64,000 nt of DNA from Guillardia theta CCMP2712 (GCF_000315625.1 NW_005434599.1:377175-441174); one strand, 5' to 3'; numbered from the stretch's first letter, positions 34,673-43,490 are shown. A program made the numbers and translations. The notes: generated by a model from the letters alone, not told the origin.

Positions 34673-37600
34673 TTACACGTCTGCTTTCGGCGTCTGGTCG
34701 AGCCTCAGAACAAGGTCTGCCCTGACATCATGCTTGACAGCTCCAGCTACTAGCTTGTCTCTGCCCGAGACTCCTCTCCTGTTGTCGCCGTCCTGCACTT
34801 CTTTCCTTGCTCGTGCTCTCCGGGATTCATGGTCTGAACGACCGCCATGATGTCGTGCTCCCTGCTGCCTATTGGTTTCCTCATTCTTCATTTCAGCCTG
34901 CTCGCGCCGCTTTGCTGTGATGTTCGAGCGCTGTCTTCTCTCCTCATTGATCTCCTTGCCATGTCTTCTCTCCTTCTTTGGCTCTCTGTCCTGACGTCTT
35001 GCAAACTTGGTGTTGTCCTCAGAGGCATGGGAAGAAGCGCTCATCCTAGTGCTGGAGATGCTGGACAGCTTGTCCACGTCCCTCCGTCTTGCAGCAGTTC
35101 GAGACGTGACATCTCCTGCTTCACTTCGTTCCAATTGATGTGACGCTGTCTTATCGCTCCTCTCCTCCCCTTCCTCTTTGGAACGCGCCCTCCTCCCCTC
35201 CTGAGAGGTCGAAGTTCGAGAGGTGCGGAGCCTGCCATGCTTCGAGACGGGAGTTTCAGATCGGACGTCTGAAGTGACGTCTTGAGGAGCCGGCGGTTTC
35301 AACCCGTTCCCTTTCAGTCTTTCCCTTGACTTGGAGCTGTCGTCTCCTCCCCGGATGAGCGACTTCTTCTCCTTCCCCCTTCTCTCCTGCTCGCCTCCCC
35401 CTCCTGCCGTGTGCTCTTGCTCGTTGCTGGTGCCATCCTTGACATGGTTGCCCGTCGTCTCCGGCGGATCCACCAAGGACTTGAGGTCTGTGGTGCTGTC
35501 GTACATCCTGCTACAATCGTGACTACAACCATGGGGCTCGGAGCCTCCAGCAAGGTTCACCGTGTAAGGGAGCTCGCACGTCGTGACCCTCTCCGTGACA
35601 GCGACCTGACAAGTCGCAGGTCACTCGCAGTGTTGGGTGGGCAAAGGACTCACTTGAGCATTGACTTCCTGCGCTCAGCCTCGGCCAGGAAGCTCGTCTT
35701 GCGTCGGACCTTGACGCACCAAACTTTCCTGGGACGAGGTCATCCATTTTAACGCATATCAGTCATTGGCTACCAGATGTTGGCAAACTGAAGGTAGGTA
35801 AGATTGGCTGTGCCAGGCACGATGGCGATGTTTTTGGTCAGGCCGTAGCCAATCTGAGACATGATGACAGAGACAACGAGGTTGATGACGACGAAGTTTG
35901 CGATGGCGATGAAGAGAGGGATGAAAGCGTAGGCCTGACCAGAGCCGTCAGCTATGAGCGATGGGTCCTGATACTTGAAGGGCCAACTTACCGTCATAGA
36001 TCCGCAGGTAGAGTCGCAGTCTGTCGACCGTGAGCATGAGATCAAGGAGCCGTCGGCGATCTGCGCGGGGGGGACTTAGAAAGAGGCTGCACCACCTGCT
36101 GATCAAACCATCTGCAGCTCTGTCCCGGTCACGCAGCCTTGAAACAGATGTCGGAGCTTAACAAGATAGACCTGATCTCTACCTCAGCTGCACATCTCCT
36201 CATTGCATCCCTGACCTCTTGCTCAAGCGTGTCCTTGGCCGTCCTGCACTGAGCAAGAAGCTCCTTGGCCGCTTCAAGGTAGCCTCCATCGTAGAATCAG
36301 CAGGCGCGAAGGAGATGATCTACCCGCGGTACCTTCCTTGCGAGGGTAGAGCGCAGAGGAGGTCCCGTACATCTTGAGCAGAGGAGACCTGTGCAGATTT
36401 CAATTCTCTCCTCAGGCTGGGACAGCCTACCAGGAATCTCCGCTCGCCATGCGGAAGAGGGTCAGGAACGCAACCCCGAGGTTCCGGAAGGAAGCAGTGT
36501 ACGGGAGGAGGAGCTGGGGTTGGAGCATTCTACATCTGAAGTCCAGAGGATCAGGGGCAAGGGAAGGAGAGCTTGACGCACCTGAACTGATGGATCTCGT
36601 CTCCTTGGACGCACATGTTCCCCATGAAGGAGATACAAATCACCCCGATGCAGAAGAAGAGGAGGAGGAGGAGTGCGCCGAGGTGCATGATCGTGACCCT
36701 CGACTTGACAATCCCTTTCAGCACTTGTCGAAGACTCTTGGGGATCGAAACTCGCTGGGGGAATGAGATCAGCTGCCGCCCTCCCTCAGACCACGTCTCA
36801 TGTACCTTGGATGCTCGGATCAGGCGGATAATGCGGAGAAGTCGGAAAATGCGAGCGAGGTTGGCGTTAAGGATGATGGATTGTGTACCCAGCGACTCGA
36901 TTCCTGTGTTGATGAAGAAGACGATGACGATGCCCCACTCGAGGAGAGACCATCTGTCAGGGCATCTCAGCGACAGGCGGGCCAACCACTCAGTCACTTG
37001 TCGAGGGTGAAGCGAGAGAGGTGGGTGGCGTAGAGCTCCATCGCCGTCATCACTGCGAAGACTTGACCGCAGAAGGAGTTGAGGCCCGTGGCGAGGTCCT
37101 GCCGGAGGTCAACGAGAGAGACCAGGAGATGGAACAAACCTGTTGGCTCGTCGACATCTTGTAACTCGTTGCGGAGAGAGCAACGATCTGCGCGATCACC
37201 ACTAGAGTTGTGAAAGCTTCCATTACGGGATGATTGAGAATCTGGTTGACGATCTGCCGACGGATGGAGGAAGTGCCGAAGATGACAGGGAGAGCTATCC
37301 TCTTGATCTTCTTGCGCGAGAAGTCTGAATCATGTCACTCGGCTCCGGCGCTGCAAGAGCGACTGACCTTGGGTCTCTATCATAGCGAGACGCTCCTTCA
37401 TCTGAGTTTCTCTGAGGGCGATCGAGTAGGATTTGACAAAGATGGCCGTGAACAAGCGCATGATGAAGAAGCCGACCTGCGCCGAACAAACAGGAAGTGA
37501 GTGAAGTGCGGGAGGACAGAAGTGAAAGAGAGTCTTGTGATCGGCTGTGAAGGGAATGGAGTCAACTCTGCGCATACATTACCATGATGATTGTCACGAC

Positions 37601-40600
37601 CGACAACAGCATCATCTGTTGTTGTTTTCACGCATCAGTTCCCTTGCATGCAGCAAGATACATCACCGCAGGGCTGTACCAATTGTAGGGTCCAGTGGTG
37701 ACTCCTAGAAAAAGGCAGGAGGAGGATGAGGAGGAGGGGGCAGGAACTTGATCTCACCTGTCGAGTCGACGGTGTAGAACATGATCTGCTGCCATCCCGT
37801 GTCGAGAGTCCCAATGACGTACATGGTGAGGATCGCGTCTCCGTACCAGTCTGAGCAGCTGGTGAGTGCGAGCAAGCTCCCAGCAGGAGATCCGACCGAA
37901 AGAGTAACTTCTCGACTGCCAGTGTCTCGTTTCCCCCGTCCCGTCCAGGCCCCGGCACTCGGAGTACTCCAACACAGAGGGGTCGGAGCAGTACACCACT
38001 TGCCCGTTGAGGAACTGCCGGCTACTGTCAGAGACCTGTAGTGCCTCTGCTACCCCAACCTGCATGCCGACTATGGCAGGGATGGAGAGAAAAGCGAACA
38101 AGATGACGGAGGTGATGAGGAGAGGGTAAAGAGCTTCTGAGAGGGCAGAGAAGAGCAGCGACAGGCCCTTGAGATGTTTCAAGGCTCTCAGTGGCCGCAA
38201 CCCTCGAAGAAGCCTCAGGACCTGTCATAACTCACTGTCACACCTGCTGGCTCTCTCATCTTCACACACACAACACATCTCATCATGCACAAACATCGCG
38301 CAACGTCTACCTCTCCTCTCCTCTCTCACTTACTTTGAACGCGCCGGTGCCCTGCACTGCCCCGCTGCGAGACAAGATCTCGTCTAACATAGCCGTGCAA
38401 ACAATGACGAAGTCTGCAAGGTACAGGATGTCAAACGAGGAATCAGTGACTTTTAGACGGCACCGAGTCTGTTCCAGTCCTCTTTGAAGTAAGATTCAGC
38501 AGATAGGACAATCACCTGCATGCCCCAAAGTCAGTCGCAGTACCTCAGATCGACCTTCACCTTTGCGAGGAATTCAAACGCGAAGATGAAGTTGAGAACT
38601 GTGTTGGAAGTATCGAGAAAGAGTCGCTCGTTCGGCTGTATTCCCGGCCTGTCCAACAGTCAAGTGTGTGTAGAAGCAGTCACCCGTCATGCCACCTCTC
38701 GAGCGACAGAAGAATGCAGGAGGCCAAGGTACAGAAGGCAATGAGCCGATTGAAGTGTCGGTTCCATATCAACCTCCGAACGAGCTTTCGGAACGGGTGC
38801 AAGGGAGGCAGGAAGTACAAGGAGTCAGGTAGTTCGAGGATGTACCTGTTGCTCTCAAGTCAAGCCCGTACCAACAATCTGAAATAGCCGTACAGATGCT
38901 CTTCCAGCGCCTGCTTTCGTTGTTGCAGTCTGCGAACTTCCGCTAGGTACCTTGAAATGGAATCAGCTCATGTAAAGACGAAGCTTGGGTCAGAGACCAC
39001 TGATGACTTTGCTGGTTTCGTCGAACCTCCTTGGCTTGTTCGTTCAATGTTGCTATCTCTGCCTCCAAGCTCTTTATCACAGTTTGAACCTGAGACGCAG
39101 CCAAAGTATATCGCAGTCTTCTGAATTCCGGAGTATTCCGGAACGTGGACTGCGAACGCGAGTAAGAACAAACAGACGAGAGGATGGAGGACCTCGTCGT
39201 CGAACAAGTGCTCTTTCTGGGCAGCAAGCATCAGCCGCACCATCTTTGCCTGTTTCTTCTGCTCCTTCTTCTTCCACGCAGCTGTTTGAGACTTGTATGC
39301 TTTCTCCCACAGGAAGTTTTGGAACTGCCTTGCTTTCTCAAGAACGTTCTCCTTGAACTCGGCTTCCGCCACTCGCTTCTTTGCCTTTCGGTTCCCTATC
39401 CCTCGCTGCTGCAAGATCGCCTCCGCTTCCAGCTGCTTCAGCGTCGCAAAGCAAGCCTGAAGCACCTCAATCGTCTCCGAGTCCGCGTCGTGCGTCCTCT
39501 TGATGATCGAGTCGATCACAAACGAGTCTCCAGGGCTCGCGAGCACCCCGAGGGAGGTGATGGCGGCGGCTCGCACAGAAGGATCCGGGTCCGAGCTCGC
39601 GTCCACCAGGTCTTTCAGCACAGACGGGTTGTCGTGCTGGCACACCTCGGAGAGAACCTTTGCTGCGCTCTCGCGCACGAACCTCGACGGGTCGTGCAGG
39701 AGCTGCCGGGCCTTGAGCGAGGCCTCCGGGAAGGCTTCACTGAGCTCCACGGGCACGAGGCTGCCCAAAGTCTCGACGGCCTTGGCACGTATGGTAGCGT
39801 GAGAGTCTTCGACCTTGGAGAGGAGAACATCTTGAGACAACATGGTTGATAGTTCAGCGCATGTACAACTAGAGCATAATCTCACCTATCACAGCCTCGT
39901 CTCCCTTCTCCGAGACTATCGCCAGGATCTGTAGGCTGTTGTACCTCTTCTGCCATCGATCGTCACTGATCATCGTCAGCATTTGCAGTCGCAGCCTGTG
40001 GCGCATCAAAGCACAAGATTTGTCTCGGATGAACTCCCTCACTCTCCCATCGGCCTCTTGTCCTTCTCCCTTCACCTCCTCAGACGAGTACGCGTGACTG
40101 CCGAAGTCAACGATGACGATGGCGGTCATGGTGTCAAGCAGAACGAAGCTCCCGACCAGGATCACGAGGAAAAAGTAGGCAGAGATCCCCCAGCCGTTGA
40201 TCTCGACCGCTGTTGACATCAGGTCGTACCAGTCTGACCTGGTGAAGAGCTGGAGGACAGTCAGGCACGACAGGCCGAAGTTGTCAAAGGAGGATCGGAG
40301 GGCGATGGCGGAGATGAAGGGCCGACCAGTGGGTACGTTGTCTATCACATCAGACCACAACAGAAGGTCACACGATGGCGCTGCGAGGTTTGTCGAGCAG
40401 TCGTCAAGCAGGAGATTTTCGTTAAGGCTGCTGCTGTTGAGCCGTCCATGGAAGATCCCTGAGGACACTCCATTGCTTTCCAGCCTCTCCTTCCACGCGT
40501 CCCCGTAGAGCGGCTTCAAGAGGAACCTGTTGCTCTCCTTGGTCGCGTCCAGGCCGACCACGTACGAGGGGACGCCGGGGATGCTGGAGAGGAAGGAGTA

Positions 40601-43351
40601 GGAGGGCCAACGGAGGAAGACGAGGGAGTTGAGGCCGAGATCAGACCTCTGGACGTCACGGCGATAGAGCCTTCCTCCCAACAAGTCCATGCCGAGGACA
40701 GCGAAGCAGAAGAGGGTGATAACAAGGATGCCGCACATGGCGAGGAAGGACTTGAAGCACTTGGCAGCTGCGATGACTTGCTTTGTCAGGCTCTGTGAAG
40801 ACAGTCAGGATTGAAGCTGCTGTAAGATGCGTACCGGAAACATCCGTCTCAACTTGACCAAGCGGATTAGCCTGAGGGTGCGGAACACTTTACCAGCAAT
40901 GTTCTTGTCGTTGCAAGCAAAGGGGTCAGTGCCGTCAGCATGTTGAAGACAGTTGAACTGCTTGACTGACGAAGTGAAGTCCACCATGGAAGTAATGACG
41001 ACAACAGCATCCAGTAGGTTCAGCCACTTTCTCAGATATTTCTTCGGACCAAACCCAACGATCTTCACCACCATCTCCACACAGAAGCAGAAGGCCAACG
41101 CCACTTGTCCAATCTGCAAGACAGCAGAGAATCTGAAGTATTGGCTCGTAGACTTCCACAACCTGCCAACCGCGCTTGACCTCGAGTGCTGAAGAAATAA
41201 GTTCGATCAGCGATGAACTTCCCGCAAGAAGCAAGATTGACCTCTAAGATGATCAAGACAAAGGTGCAACAAACCAGAACAAGAATCACGTTGTTAAATT
41301 TTTTGGAAGAAGCAATATTGAAACAGACAATTCGAACCCGTTGTAACACGGAGATTTTCTGCTCCTCCTGGTATTCGTCGACTTCCAATATGTTGTCTGC
41401 ATACTCGCCCACGACCATGGAGAAGATTGTAGTCTCATACCTGCACACGAGTCAGCGATGGACCATCATTGTGAGGGTTGCTTGACTGAAGAGTACCATT
41501 TGTTCCATGAACGAAACAGGAGCTGATTCTTCAACCTCCGCGCTGTCTTTGATGCAACCGCCTGCTTGTCGCCCAGGCTCGCAAGGTAGCGCTTGTAGTT
41601 CTGCTGCGTCTTCTCGTGTGTGTTTGCAACCCAAAGCTGAAACGGCAGAGCCGTTGTTCGGATGTTTTTCCACCTCGACACGATTCGGTTCACGTTGGCT
41701 GCCAGCGCCTTCGAGCAACCAGTTAGAGTGGGCAAGAGGAAAATTTGCTCCAAGTGAGAGGATGCGAGAGGCACACTTCGTAGCAACTTACCTGATTCCT
41801 CATGTTTTCCAGCCGATGAGCTAGGACAGCAATCAGGGCTTGTCTGAGAAACAGCGGCCCGATCATGATGTAGAAGAGAAAGATTAGCACTTGCTCTTGG
41901 GAATTTGAGTCCATCAGATCGTTCATGACATCCCCCCACCTGGAACAAGTCTCAGCTCATACCCAGCTCGCTCCTCTGTCGACAGACTTTGTTAATGTGA
42001 AGATCTGGAAGGAGGTCACCAACGAGTTGCCGAAGTTGTCAAAGCTGTAATGCCGTCCAGGCAACACCGCAGGGGTGGGCAGGCACGACCAGCAATTGGA
42101 GCAGGACGCTGAGTTCGGGCAATGATAGAGAGCACTAGTCCCACTGACACAAGCAGAAGGTTAGCATGACGTTTGCAAGTCTCCGTCTTACGTCACCTGA
42201 ATACAGCACACGGCCTTTCATACCCTTGCGCCAGTTCTCCGTCGTTAACCAAGTAACAGCGACCATGGAGTTCACCACTGAAGATCTGATTGAATATCAC
42301 TGTGACCAGGAGGATAACGCCAAAGATGAGGATGAAGACATAGAACAGAAGAATCGAAGAATGAGCGAGAAGATCGACTACTAATCGCAAGCTCGGGAAG
42401 AATCGAATGGCTCTAAGGACTCTGATCGCTCGCAAACAACGCAGAGCGTTAACTCGAGCGATGCCTCCAGCTATGAAAATGTCCAGCAGTCCAAACAAGA
42501 TGAGAAACGCATCTAACACATTCCAGCCATCTGCAAGGTAAGTTTTCCCACCCAGCACCAGCCCATGTGCGAGGATTTTCAGAACCAACTGTTAGTTTGT
42601 CAACGTCAATAAGGAGTTGTGGAAGGCATGCACCAACTCATACCTCGAAAAGAAAGAAGAAAGTGCACAGGAAATTGAAGTAGTCAGACGTTTCAAGCTT
42701 TGTGGTGGATGAGACTGGAAAGTATGTGGCTTTCAGGGGGTCGTTGAAGGCCAAGATCAGGGTGCTCAGAAAAATGAAGAAAGTGACTACCCCATGAAAG
42801 ATCTTGCTTTCTACTATAGCGATTGCACACAACCTTACAGGAGATTGCAGATCCAGGCAATAAAGCGCTCTCGATTGAAATCTCTCCCTGTTCGGTTTGT
42901 ACCGCCGGATTCTCTTGACAAGTTGTGACTGTATGGATTCAGAATTGATTTTCCTTCCACCATTCAGCGCACTGTCGATGATGTTTTGCAACACTTCGCG
43001 ACTGGCCTCTACCGCCTCTTGCCGTAGCTTCCTTTGTTCGATGAGCTTCAAAGGGTTCAGCTGAGTCTCCGGATCGTAAGAGCTTTCATTGTCTCTCCGA
43101 ATGGTCTTGAAAGCGATTTCGAATCCCTTGCCTGCCCTTGTTCTTTCTTGCACGTCTGCTTTTCCCTCAGGAAACCGGACGAGGCTGCCATGTGCGTCAA
43201 TCAGATGAATCTGTCTCCCTAGCAATTTTGCTTTCGATTCTATTGGCTCCTGTTGAGAGCCTGCAAGTAGACTAGTCGACATAGCGAAGCGAGCTCTTGC
43301 ACGCTGTTCTGTCTTGTCTCTCTGCGATGCATCCTCGTCGACTTCGTTCAT
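34673..43351 (-). CDS. Four-domain voltage-gated cation channel (Cav/Nav/NALCN superfamily) with HEAT repeats in the II-III linker; many exons
   Basis: Four S4 segments (LRCLRAIRVLRAIR, FRTLRLIRLVKLRR, LRLLRGLRPLRALKHLK, ARIFRLLRIIRLIR), four P-loops (SFDNFG, SFDNFG, SFDWYG, SFRNLG), YLADGWNVLD; ends approximate. Confidence 0.9.
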
Positions 43352-43490
43352 CTTCGTACAGTTGGGCTTCCTCCTACACGAAGCTCTTCTTCCCCTTCCT
43401 CCGCTGCATCATGGCGTCTGACTTGCGAGCACTTCTTACGGCATCACGCGTTGATTAGCCTTGTCAAATTTTGATTAGTTTTTTTGTTGG

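What the first reader, a model, noticed from the sequence alone, without database searches (positions are those of the whole stretch)
36431..42010. Four-domain channel with a non-canonical selectivity filter (T/S/D/D plus pore K and R)
Seen after manual splicing: DI FQIFT-L-T-K-W (across intron 41940-41987), DII LQLFT-R-S-D-W (40229-40243), DIII YVIGT-L-D-T-G-W (37792-37809, one-residue insertion), DIV FRMAS-G-D-S-W (36431-36444). Known: the TxE/DxW position gives EEEE (Cav), DEKA (Nav1), DEEA (Nav2) and EEKE (NALCN). Here it reads T,S,D,D with basic residues beside it in DI and DII, while all four S4 sensors are intact. Inference: novel ion selectivity or a non-conducting voltage sensor.
Basis: partly seen in the sequence, partly recalled or inferred. 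Interest (0 to 1): 0.75.

Follow-up and report, generated by a model that had tools for sequence, protein, structure and literature searches.

The report
Algal T-type-like channel, T/S/D/D pore
The alga Guillardia theta has an intact, conserved gene for a voltage-gated channel related to T-type calcium channels that has lost two of its four acidic pore residues and carries a HEAT-repeat domain in a cytoplasmic loop, so it probably passes sodium or potassium rather than selecting calcium, though no one has measured this.

Summary
A minus-strand gene (CDS 43351..35557) can be assembled into 33 exons with 32 GT..AG introns of 41-112 nt. It encodes 2027 aa with no internal stop. The pore ring reads T418 / S909 / D1540 (one-residue insertion) / D1850. 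K419 sits at DI n+1, R908 at DII n-1 and D910 at DII n+1. All four S4 segments carry 5-6 Arg/Lys.

The gene is not decaying. A 95%-identical metagenome ortholog gives dN/dS 0.137, and every indel lies in an intron or flank. Distant, intron-poor relatives from at least four other lineages read S / A / E (same insertion) / D straight through open frames.

The family sits beside E/E/D/D (Cav3) channels in a tree (99/99) and scores best against solved T-type structures. G. theta paralogs read E/T/D/D and E/A/D/?. R908 is ordinary among protist channels. K419 is lineage-specific and pairs with D910; the relatives have G/G there.

New here: a HEAT-repeat solenoid in the II-III linker, conserved and confined to this family. 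The relatives also carry C-terminal PH domains.

I found no RNA support, and ion selectivity is inferred only. The scan has noted other low-charge pore rings in this genome (Q/S/D/D, S/S/R/D, T/S/S/A, K/D/D/D).

The parts
35557..43351 (-). Whole coding region of the channel gene: 33 exons, 32 GT..AG introns (41-112 nt), 2027 codons. The 3' end beyond about 35654 is uncertain.
   Evidence: Model built and translated without an internal stop. Pfam Ion_trans matches on the exon ORFs. Collinear with relatives' open frames.
41930..42010 (-). DI P-loop FQIFTLTK|WGD, interrupted by intron 3 (41987..41940). Ring residue T418 (41990-41992). K419 at n+1 (41989, 41988 | 41939).
   Evidence: FQIFTL[T] aligns with Cav3.3 DI FQVITL[E]. 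Relatives read LLTLSGWG in an open frame. The intron has an in-frame TGA.
40223..40255 (-). DII P-loop LQLFTRSDWYD: R908 (n-1), ring residue S909, D910 (n+1, the 'beacon' position).
   Evidence: Aligned to Cav3 DII TQEDW. Relatives read TKAGW or SKAGW.
37786..37821 (-). DIII P-loop YVIGTLDTGWQQ with a one-residue insertion. Acidic D1540 (37801-37803) and T1541 at W-2.
   Evidence: Relatives read FALNE[GA]GW with the same insertion. HMMER's gap placement is ambiguous.
36385..36456 (-). DIV P-loop FRMASGDSW|S. D1850 (36436-36438). The W codon is split by intron 26 (36430..36389).
   Evidence: Relatives read LSSGDAWS.
42397..42456 (-). DI S4, five Arg at three-residue spacing.
40844..40891 (-). 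DII S4 (R, R, R, K, R, R).
38168..38336 (-). DIII S4 (K, R, R, R, R, K), spanning the 112-nt intron 15.
36752..36856 (-). DIV S4 (five R plus K), spanning the in-frame 51-nt intron 24.
39430..39964 (-). HEAT-like repeat solenoid (aa about 1000-1159) in the DII-DIII cytoplasmic linker. It begins in the same open frame as DII S6 and continues after the 55-nt intron 8.
   Evidence: Pfam HEAT_2 at 70.6 bits against a 27.7 cut-off. AlphaFold2 pLDDT 85-95 over the repeats. alphaRep and HEAT matches. About 40% identical to the relatives' linker. dN/dS 0.082.
38845..39429 (-). Long charged helical / coiled-coil-like stretch (aa 1160-1307) between the HEAT domain and DIII S1.
   Evidence: A 60-residue helix in the model. 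Conserved and collinear with relatives.
35560..35727 (-). Short basic C-terminal tail with several RRxS/T motifs. Its last exon is uncertain.
   Evidence: The first part aligns with the relatives' FIWTRWRRQ....

Best explanation
This is a functional single-copy gene of Guillardia theta. It encodes a four-domain voltage-gated cation channel from a lineage that is sister to T-type (Cav3, E/E/D/D) channels.

**Shown.**
- Four complete voltage sensors.
- A pore ring of T/S/D/D, with only the DIII and DIV carboxylates left.
- A Lys (DI n+1) next to an Asp (DII n+1) one level above the ring.
- A HEAT-repeat solenoid plus a long helix in the II-III linker.
- Strong purifying selection.
- Conservation of the ring class and of the HEAT insert in distant relatives.

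**Inferred.**
- Depolarisation opens a pore that has lost the high-affinity Ca2+ site of four-carboxylate rings.
- It therefore conducts monovalent cations (Na+/K+), with weak Ca2+ selectivity and weak Ca2+ block.
- K419 neutralises D910, much as the exon-12a lysine does in Na+-permeable invertebrate T-type channels.
- The HEAT domain, and the PH domains in relatives, tether or couple the channel to cytoplasmic or membrane partners.
For: - **Gene model.** 33 exons, all introns GT..AG, 2027 aa, no stop. Ion_trans on the exon ORFs of all four repeats.
- **Selection.** The ortholog L001 diverges 4.1% in exons and 9.9% in introns, with all indels outside exons. There are 96 synonymous and 44 non-synonymous codon changes, giving dN/dS 0.137 (DI 0.086). 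The P-loops are unchanged. Splice sites are kept.
- **Relatives.** P0002, P0151, P0152, P0153, P0158, P0159 and L021-L023 read DI TLSGW, DII [TS]KAGW, DIII ALNE[GA]GW and DIV SSGDAW in open frames. They carry HEAT between DII and DIII. They are collinear with the model over about 570 and 780 residues at 33-37% identity.
- **Affinity to Cav3.** Best PDB scores are to Cav3.1-3.3: 250 bits, against 178 for Cav1.2, 159 for Nav1.5 and 36 for NALCN. In a careful IQ-TREE, the family plus G. theta paralogs score 100/99 and are sister to rows with Cav3 P-loop motifs at 99/99.
- **Established knowledge.** Replacing ring glutamates in Cav channels lowers Ca2+ affinity and selectivity step by step. Nav DEAA-type rings with two carboxylates are non-selective. 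A Lys beside the DII n+1 Asp makes Cav3 Na+-permeable (PMC10120453).
Against: - No RNA evidence. In the runs laid, only 8 poor reads came from about 6% of one RNA run, and one unspliced 160-nt contig from another. Neither expression nor splicing is shown.
- Selectivity cannot be read from a ring alone. PMC5824947 and PMC10120453 both stress this.
- Outer-vestibule acidic residues, D910 and the large conserved extracellular loops could still favour Ca2+.
- The conserved S6 Asn is replaced in three repeats: Q with a neighbouring R in DI, D in DII and R in DIII. Its effect on gating or conduction is unknown.
- The DIII ring residue is ambiguous (D1540 or T1541).
- No full pore model was made.
Confidence: 0.55

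Rival explanations
1. It is a non-conducting or barely conducting voltage sensor. The four S4 sensors move with voltage. The signal passes to a cytoplasmic partner through the HEAT solenoid in the II-III linker, as Cav1.1 signals to RyR1 through its II-III loop. The pore is vestigial.
For: - A folded, conserved protein-binding-type domain sits exactly in the II-III linker and is the best-conserved cytoplasmic part.
- The ring has lost half its charge.
- Basic or altered residues replace the conserved S6 Asn in three repeats.
- Relatives add PH domains.
- The gene is silent or nearly so in the RNA runs laid.
Against: - The P-helices, the Thr and Trp anchors, the two acidic ring residues and S6 are kept across lineages 33-40% identical.
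- DI and DII pore regions have dN/dS of 0.09-0.17. A vestigial pore should drift.
- Lys substitutions of the S6 Asn in human Nav channels still conduct (own knowledge).
- No partner is known.
Confidence: 0.15
2. It is a sodium-selective channel of independent origin. K419, one position above the ring in DI, reaches into the ring. It then acts like the DEKA/DKEA lysine of animal Nav1, giving a net ring charge of -1.
For: - K at DI n+1 occurs in none of the 150 nearest representatives, which mostly have G there.
- It is kept in the 95%-identical ortholog.
- The count of two carboxylates plus one lysine equals that of DEKA.
- The position of the lysine is known to be flexible between DII and DIII in animals (PMC10120453).
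Against: - The lysine is not at the ring position.
- The distant relatives lack it (G), so it is not a family feature.
- It co-occurs with D910, where relatives have G/G. This suggests a charge-neutral pair rather than a free lysine.
- There are no functional data.
Confidence: 0.15
3. It remains a calcium-permeable, T-type-like channel. The DIII and DIV aspartates, the DII n+1 Asp and the outer acidic residues (D after W in DI and DII) still give useful Ca2+ entry for signalling.
For: - It is sister to E/E/D/D channels.
- It keeps the DII 'beacon' Asp that PMC10120453 links to Ca2+ selectivity.
- WGD and WYD motifs follow the filter.
Against: - The beacon Asp is absent in all the distant relatives (G) and is paired with K419 here.
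- Two of four ring carboxylates are gone. In Cav1 mutagenesis this strongly lowers Ca2+ affinity (own knowledge).
Confidence: 0.12
4. It is a decaying gene or a mis-spliced model. On this reading the odd residues come from pseudogenisation or from wrong exon choice.
For: - No RNA reads.
- There are 32 very short introns, several of them in frame and open.
Against: - dN/dS is 0.137, with no stop or frameshift in 1178 shared codons of the ortholog.
- All 32 introns are GT..AG.
- The same residue classes are read in uninterrupted open frames of relatives.
- The model aligns end to end with those frames.
Confidence: 0.03

Closest known systems
Cav3 (T-type, low-voltage-activated) calcium channels, ring E/E/D/D
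   Same: - Four-domain architecture with charged S4 in all repeats.
- Asp in the DIII and DIV ring positions.
- Asp at DII n+1.
- Best sequence scores among solved structures.
- Sister position in the tree.
   Different: - The DI and DII glutamates are replaced by Thr and Ser.
- One extra residue in the DIII filter.
- Lys at DI n+1.
- HEAT solenoid in the II-III linker.
- Long conserved extracellular loops in DII (S5-P) and DIV (P-S6).
- The family is beside the Cav3-motif group, not nested inside it.
Na+-permeable invertebrate Cav3 isoforms (exon 12a; 'beacon' model, PMC10120453)
   Same: A lysine placed next to the DII n+1 aspartate. In those channels it neutralises the Asp and shifts permeation toward Na+.
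   Different: - There the lysine comes from the DII extracellular turret, and the E/E/D/D ring is intact.
- Here the lysine is in the DI P-loop, and the ring itself has lost two charges.
Nav2 (DEEA) and DEAA-type mutant sodium channels
   Same: A ring with few carboxylates and no ring lysine. Such channels are poorly selective between Na+, K+ and Ca2+.
   Different: - The carboxylates sit in DI and DII there, and in DIII and DIV here.
- Sequence similarity to Nav is lower than to Cav3.
- I did not look for an inactivation-particle motif.
Uncharacterised protist four-domain channels catalogued by Pozdnyakov et al. 2018 (PMC5824947), and G. theta paralogs
   Same: - Non-canonical rings with uncharged DI or DII are on record (A/G/K/E and S/S/K/E in oomycetes).
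- G. theta paralogs read E/T/D/D (contig C52) and E/A/D/? (C25).
- The scan's own notes list Q/S/D/D, S/S/R/D, T/S/S/A and K/D/D/D in this genome.
   Different: - None of the ten G. theta entries in that paper's S4 table matches this gene.
- None of the 150 nearest representatives carries the HEAT insert.
Cav1.1 II-III loop coupling to RyR1
   Same: The same cytoplasmic linker is the site of a protein-interaction element.
   Different: - In Cav1.1 it is a short unstructured motif.
- Here it is a folded HEAT-like solenoid of about 160 residues plus a long helix.
- No partner is known.

Membership tests
[quoted passage not shown] | Four homologous six-helix repeats (Pfam Ion_trans) in one polypeptide | tested here: met
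   Ion_trans matches on exon ORFs of all four repeats. The 2027-aa model is collinear with relatives.
[quoted passage not shown] | Arg/Lys every third residue in S4 of each repeat | tested here: met
   5-6 basic residues in each S4.
[quoted passage not shown] | Re-entrant P-loop with T-x-X-x-W signature between S5 and S6 | tested here: met
   TLTKW, TRSDW, TLDTGW (one extra residue), SGDSW. Aligned to Cav3 P-loops.
Cav3 / T-type calcium channels | E/E/D/D ring | tested here: not met
   The ring is T/S/D/D. Only the DIII and DIV aspartates are shared.
Cav3 / T-type calcium channels | Asp at DII n+1 ('beacon') | tested here: met
   D910 aligns with the D of TQEDW. The distant relatives have G there.
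Cav3 / T-type calcium channels | Falls inside the Cav3 clade | tested here: not met
   It is sister to, not nested in, the group with Cav3 P-loop motifs. The union has 99/99 support. Sampling was limited to the nearest representatives, and the tree is unrooted.
Cav3 / T-type calcium channels | Helix-loop-helix gating brake in the I-II linker | not tested
   The linker (aa about 466-570) was not compared with Cav3.
NALCN | Ring with Lys in DII or DIII (EKEE/EEKE) and charge-poor S4 segments | tested here: not met
   No ring lysine and fully charged S4s. NALCN scores only 36 bits against the relative's DIII-DIV.
Nav1/Nav2 | DEKA, DKEA or DEEA ring | tested here: not met
   The ring is T/S/D/D. 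Nav scores are lower than Cav3 scores. Nav-like rows fall outside the clade.
HEAT-like repeats (Pfam HEAT_2, PF13646) | Score above the curated cut-off and a helical-hairpin solenoid fold | tested here: met
   70.6 bits against a 27.7 cut-off. The model shows seven helices in hairpins, pLDDT 85-95. alphaRep/HEAT matches by sequence and by fold.

The most novel reading that the evidence does not exclude
Cryptophytes and their unidentified relatives may have turned a T-type-like calcium channel into a new class of voltage-gated monovalent-cation channel, or a voltage sensor. They did so by deleting the DI and DII ring glutamates and building a HEAT solenoid into the II-III linker, with PH domains at the C-terminus in relatives. 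In Guillardia a hard-wired K419-D910 pair would give an independent, non-animal route to Na+ preference. The HEAT domain would couple membrane voltage to a cytoplasmic partner.
Probability: 0.2. Interest if true: 0.8.

Novelty: new variant of a known kind. Interest (0 to 1): 0.55.

Why it matters
Ion selectivity in four-domain channels is explained almost entirely from animal E/E/E/E, E/E/D/D, DEKA and EEKE rings. This family is a natural, selectively maintained experiment. It is an E/E/D/D-type channel with both DI and DII glutamates removed. One form has a neighbouring Lys-Asp pair (Guillardia) and the other has none (relatives).

The Guillardia protein can be written out from the exon model given here, although that model still needs cDNA confirmation. 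That makes several things directly testable:
- how many ring charges a T-type scaffold needs for Ca2+ selection;
- the 'beacon' idea;
- whether Na+ preference arose outside animals.

I found no four-domain channel with a HEAT domain in the II-III linker or with C-terminal PH domains in the papers I searched. These point to unknown coupling partners in algal excitability.

Tried and rejected
- **RNA support.** One run search and one lay of four runs. X1 is genomic DNA. The raw RNA run X5 was sampled at about 6% and gave 8 reads at 90-95% likeness. X8 gave one unspliced 160-nt contig. No joints were seen, so there is neither support for nor evidence against the splicing.
- **Word search with the DII exon**. 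It found only the near-identical P0001. The length window hides full-length kin, so I then used the exhaustive search and two more word searches with relatives' open frames.
- **PH domain in the window**. tblastn with the relatives' C-termini found none. The Guillardia gene seems to end in a short basic tail.
- **Pseudogene or mis-splicing.** Rejected.
- **NALCN-like leak channel.** Rejected: full S4 charges and very low similarity.
- **'Pore R' as a special feature.** Rejected, because R at DII n-1 is common.
- **HEAT insert elsewhere.** A local HMM of the HEAT region against all 159 fetched proteins hit only family members.
- **Second G. theta copy.** An own-genome search with the relative's DIII-DIV found no locus more similar than this one.
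- **Joined model.** The joined 2027-aa model was not handed to any search, family-scan or folding tool, so no full pore model exists. It was assembled only inside scripts. There it served for translation, dN/dS, a local phmmer against proteins already fetched, MAFFT and IQ-TREE. Tool searches were done exon by exon, by reference.
- **Identity of the relatives.** The organisms behind the ENA, Logan and JGI contigs could not be identified.


Full report
**What is there.**
The finding lies in a minus-strand, intron-dense eukaryotic gene. The genome is 87.1 Mb in 669 contigs. One of its paralogs (contig C52, equal to P0006) carries the S4 strings listed for Guillardia theta XP_005829415 in Pozdnyakov et al. 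2018. The organism is therefore G. theta or something very near it.

Pfam Ion_trans matches fall on exon-sized open frames of all four repeats. I read every junction by eye and then assembled the model in a script:
- 33 exons.
- 32 introns, all GT..AG. Thirty are 41-57 nt; the other three are 83, 106 and 112 nt.
- CDS 43351..35557, 2027 codons, no internal stop.
- The extreme 3' end is uncertain, that is, the last small exon or a stop at 35651-35653.
- One donor in the DIV extracellular loop (intron 28) is also uncertain.

**The observation.**
- DI is FQIFTLTK, then a 48-nt intron, then WGD. The Lys codon is split AA|G.
- DII is LQLFTRSDW.
- DIII is YVIGTLDTGW, with one residue more than T-x-E-x-W.
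- DIV is FRMASGDSW, with the Trp codon split TG|G.

Alignment to solved Cav3 channels puts T418 on the DI Glu (FQIFTL[T] against FQVITL[E]). It puts S909 on the DII Glu and D910 on the following Asp (TRSDW against TQEDW).

In DIII the placement of the extra residue is ambiguous. HMMER puts the relative's Gly (our T1541) in the ring column and the acidic residue one position earlier. Counting from the P1-helix Thr, the acidic residue is the ring residue.

All four S4 segments have five or six Arg/Lys at three-residue spacing.

**Is it real and maintained?**
RNA evidence failed. The best holders of the sequence are genomic. A raw RNA run sampled at about 6% gave eight poor reads. One 160-nt contig crosses intron 25 unspliced. 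Support therefore comes from comparison.

A metagenome contig, L001, is 95% identical over window 39371-43471.
- Exons differ by 4.1%. Introns differ by 9.9% and the 5' flank by 10.1%.
- All five indels lie in introns or flank.
- Mismatches by codon position are 31, 17 and 96.
- There are 96 synonymous and 44 non-synonymous codon changes, and no stop in 1178 codons.
- Nei-Gojobori dN/dS is 0.137 overall: DI 0.086, DII 0.165, HEAT part 0.082.
- The P-loops are unchanged, and all eight shared introns keep GT..AG.

**Distant relatives.**
An exhaustive search with the DII exon found one specific relative beyond L001. That is P0002, which aligns over the whole exon, including its 135-residue S5-P loop. 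Everything else matched only the P-loop and S6. Following its contig, and making two word searches and one metagenome scan, gave at least four further lineages: L013/L020, L022/P0158, L021/P0159/P0152, and P0153 with the more distant L023.

These relatives are intron-poor. In uninterrupted open frames they read:
- DI LLTLSGWG.
- DII [TS]KAGW.
- DIII FALNE[GA]GW, with the same one-residue insertion.
- DIV SSGDAW.

The model aligns with them end to end. Identity is 33% over about 570 residues from the DI P-loop to DII S6, and 37% over about 780 residues from the linker to the C-terminal tail. Every exon junction falls in continuous alignment. This validates the splicing, including the K|W junction in DI.

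So the ring class is a family character: small hydroxyl or Ala in DI and DII, and carboxylates in DIII and DIV. Those were splicing that restores acidic residues, and an unconserved filter in a decaying gene.

**What kind of channel.**
Against solved structures, the relative's DIII-DIV frame scores 250, 244 and 234 bits with Cav3.2, Cav3.3 and Cav3.1. It scores 178 with Cav1.2, 159 with Nav1.5 and 36 with NALCN. The window's DII exon also hits Cav3 first.

I made a careful IQ-TREE of the DIII-DIV region with 44 rows.
- The window and its relatives group at 100/100.
- They join G. theta paralogs C52, C25 and C133 and P0059 at 100/99.
- That clade is sister to rows carrying the exact Cav3 P-loop motifs, and the union has 99/99 support.
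- E/E/E/E-type and Nav-like rows fall outside.
- Caveats: sampling was biased to the nearest representatives, there are some long branches, and the tree is unrooted.

The G. theta paralogs read E/T/D/D (C52) and E/A/D/? (C25). The DII Glu was therefore lost in a wider cryptophyte clade, and the DI Glu in the HEAT-bearing family only.

An own-genome search with the relative's DIII-DIV finds no locus more similar than this gene's exons.

**The basic residues.**
R at DII n-1 is frequent among the 150 nearest representatives with acidic rings (LTRDDW, LTREDW). The relatives have K there. It is not a distinctive pore charge.

K at DI n+1 occurs in none of those representatives, which mostly have Gly there. 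It is Gly in the distant relatives too.

It co-varies with DII n+1. Guillardia has K419 with D910, and the relatives have G with G. The level above the ring is thus net neutral in both.

The 'beacon' review (PMC10120453) reports that the DII n+1 Asp marks Ca2+-selective channels. It also reports that a lysine placed beside that Asp makes invertebrate T-type channels Na+-permeable.

**New architecture.**
The II-III linker holds a HEAT-like repeat domain.
- Pfam HEAT_2 scores 70.6 bits against a cut-off of 27.7.
- Its first repeat lies in the same open frame as DII S6. It continues after a 55-nt intron.
- The exon folds with pLDDT 85-95 into helical hairpins followed by a 60-residue helix.
- It matches alphaRep and other HEAT-type repeats by sequence and by fold.
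- It is about 40% identical to the relatives' linker, more than the membrane domains are.
- P0159 has Ion_trans and HEAT_2 in one frame.
- A local HMM of this region hits no other fetched channel.

The relatives also end in one to three PH domains. None is found in the window.

None of the ten G. theta channels in the S4 table of PMC5824947 matches this gene. 'HEAT repeat' does not occur in the channel-evolution papers returned by my search. That is a weak negative.

**How it most likely works.**

*Shown:* complete sensors, a conserved pore scaffold, a ring with two carboxylates, a Lys-Asp pair above it, and a cytoplasmic HEAT module.

*Inferred from established mutagenesis of Cav and Nav rings (my own knowledge) and:*
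- The high-affinity Ca2+ site is gone.
- The open pore should therefore pass monovalent cations, with weak Ca2+ selectivity and block.
- The HEAT domain should dock a partner.

I give this reading 0.55. The rivals are a pure voltage sensor (0.15), a Na+-selective channel through K419 (0.15), a channel still usefully Ca2+-permeable (0.12), and decay or artefact (0.03).

**Known or new.**
Non-canonical rings are documented in protists (PMC5824947). Earlier notes of this scan list other low-charge rings in this same genome: Q/S/D/D with a C2 domain, S/S/R/D, T/S/S/A and K/D/D/D. Of these I checked only that contig C218 has Gln in DI.

The ring alone is therefore one more member of a cryptophyte radiation. 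What is particular here is the loss of both DI and DII glutamates on a T-type-like scaffold, the K-D against G-G contrast, and the HEAT (and PH) fusion. I class it as a new variant of a known kind.

**Limits.**
- There is no cDNA and no functional data.
- There is no full-length structure. It was used only inside scripts.
- The relatives' organisms are unknown.
- The 3' end is uncertain.

Noticed in passing
window 41792-41860 (DI S6), 40100-40180 (DII S6), 37400-37476 (DIII S6): The Asn conserved in S6 of Cav/Nav repeats is replaced. It is Gln with an Arg just before it in DI (K in relatives), Asp in DII (N in relatives) and Arg in DIII (K in relatives). It is kept in DIV here (K in relatives). 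The effect on gating or conduction is unknown.
   Followed up: partly
L023:1830-3689, P0152 aa 872-973, L013:7314-7829: Relatives of this channel end in one to three PH domains, read in the same open frame as DIV in P0152 and L023. The Guillardia gene shows none in the window.
   Followed up: partly
window 35560-35727: The predicted C-terminal tail is short and basic, with repeated RRxS/T motifs (RRKTS, RRKS, RRGS, RRAS). These look like basophilic-kinase sites.
   Followed up: no
window 40256-40680 (DII S5-P loop) and 35992-36388 (DIV P-S6 loop): There are two unusually long extracellular loops, about 135 and 75 residues. They have cysteines and motifs conserved with the relatives (PLYG, CDSTCG, GCVT..EL). 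They are likely a structured dome over the pore mouth.
   Followed up: no
L001 (ENA ERZ930071 contig), aligned to window 39371-43471: A metagenome holds a second Guillardia-like genome 95% identical at this locus. In it the 48-nt DI intron has no in-frame stop, unlike in the window.
   Followed up: partly
G000 contigs C52:7358-9247, C25:325610-327220, C133:9040-10653, C218:29927-31063: G. theta has intron-poor paralogs of the same T-type-like clade with rings E/T/D/D (C52), E/A/D/? (C25) and Gln in DI (C218). The own-genome search returned 51 matching stretches to a DIII-DIV query.
   Followed up: partly
window 34673-35560 (-): A 295-codon open frame of low-complexity, highly charged sequence lies directly downstream of the channel's predicted stop. 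It could be a 3' extension or a separate gene.
   Followed up: no
window 37709 and 40024: The genomic run X1 differs from the window in two places. One is a 1-nt deletion in the pyrimidine tract of intron 18. The other is C>T at 40024 in the linker between DII S6 and the HEAT domain. Each rests on one contig of depth about 5.
   Followed up: no
L013:1-1640, L022:1-260: The relatives' contigs are rich in CA/TG microsatellites and short tandem repeats around and inside the gene. P0159 reads through one such intron. The organisms are unidentified.
   Followed up: no
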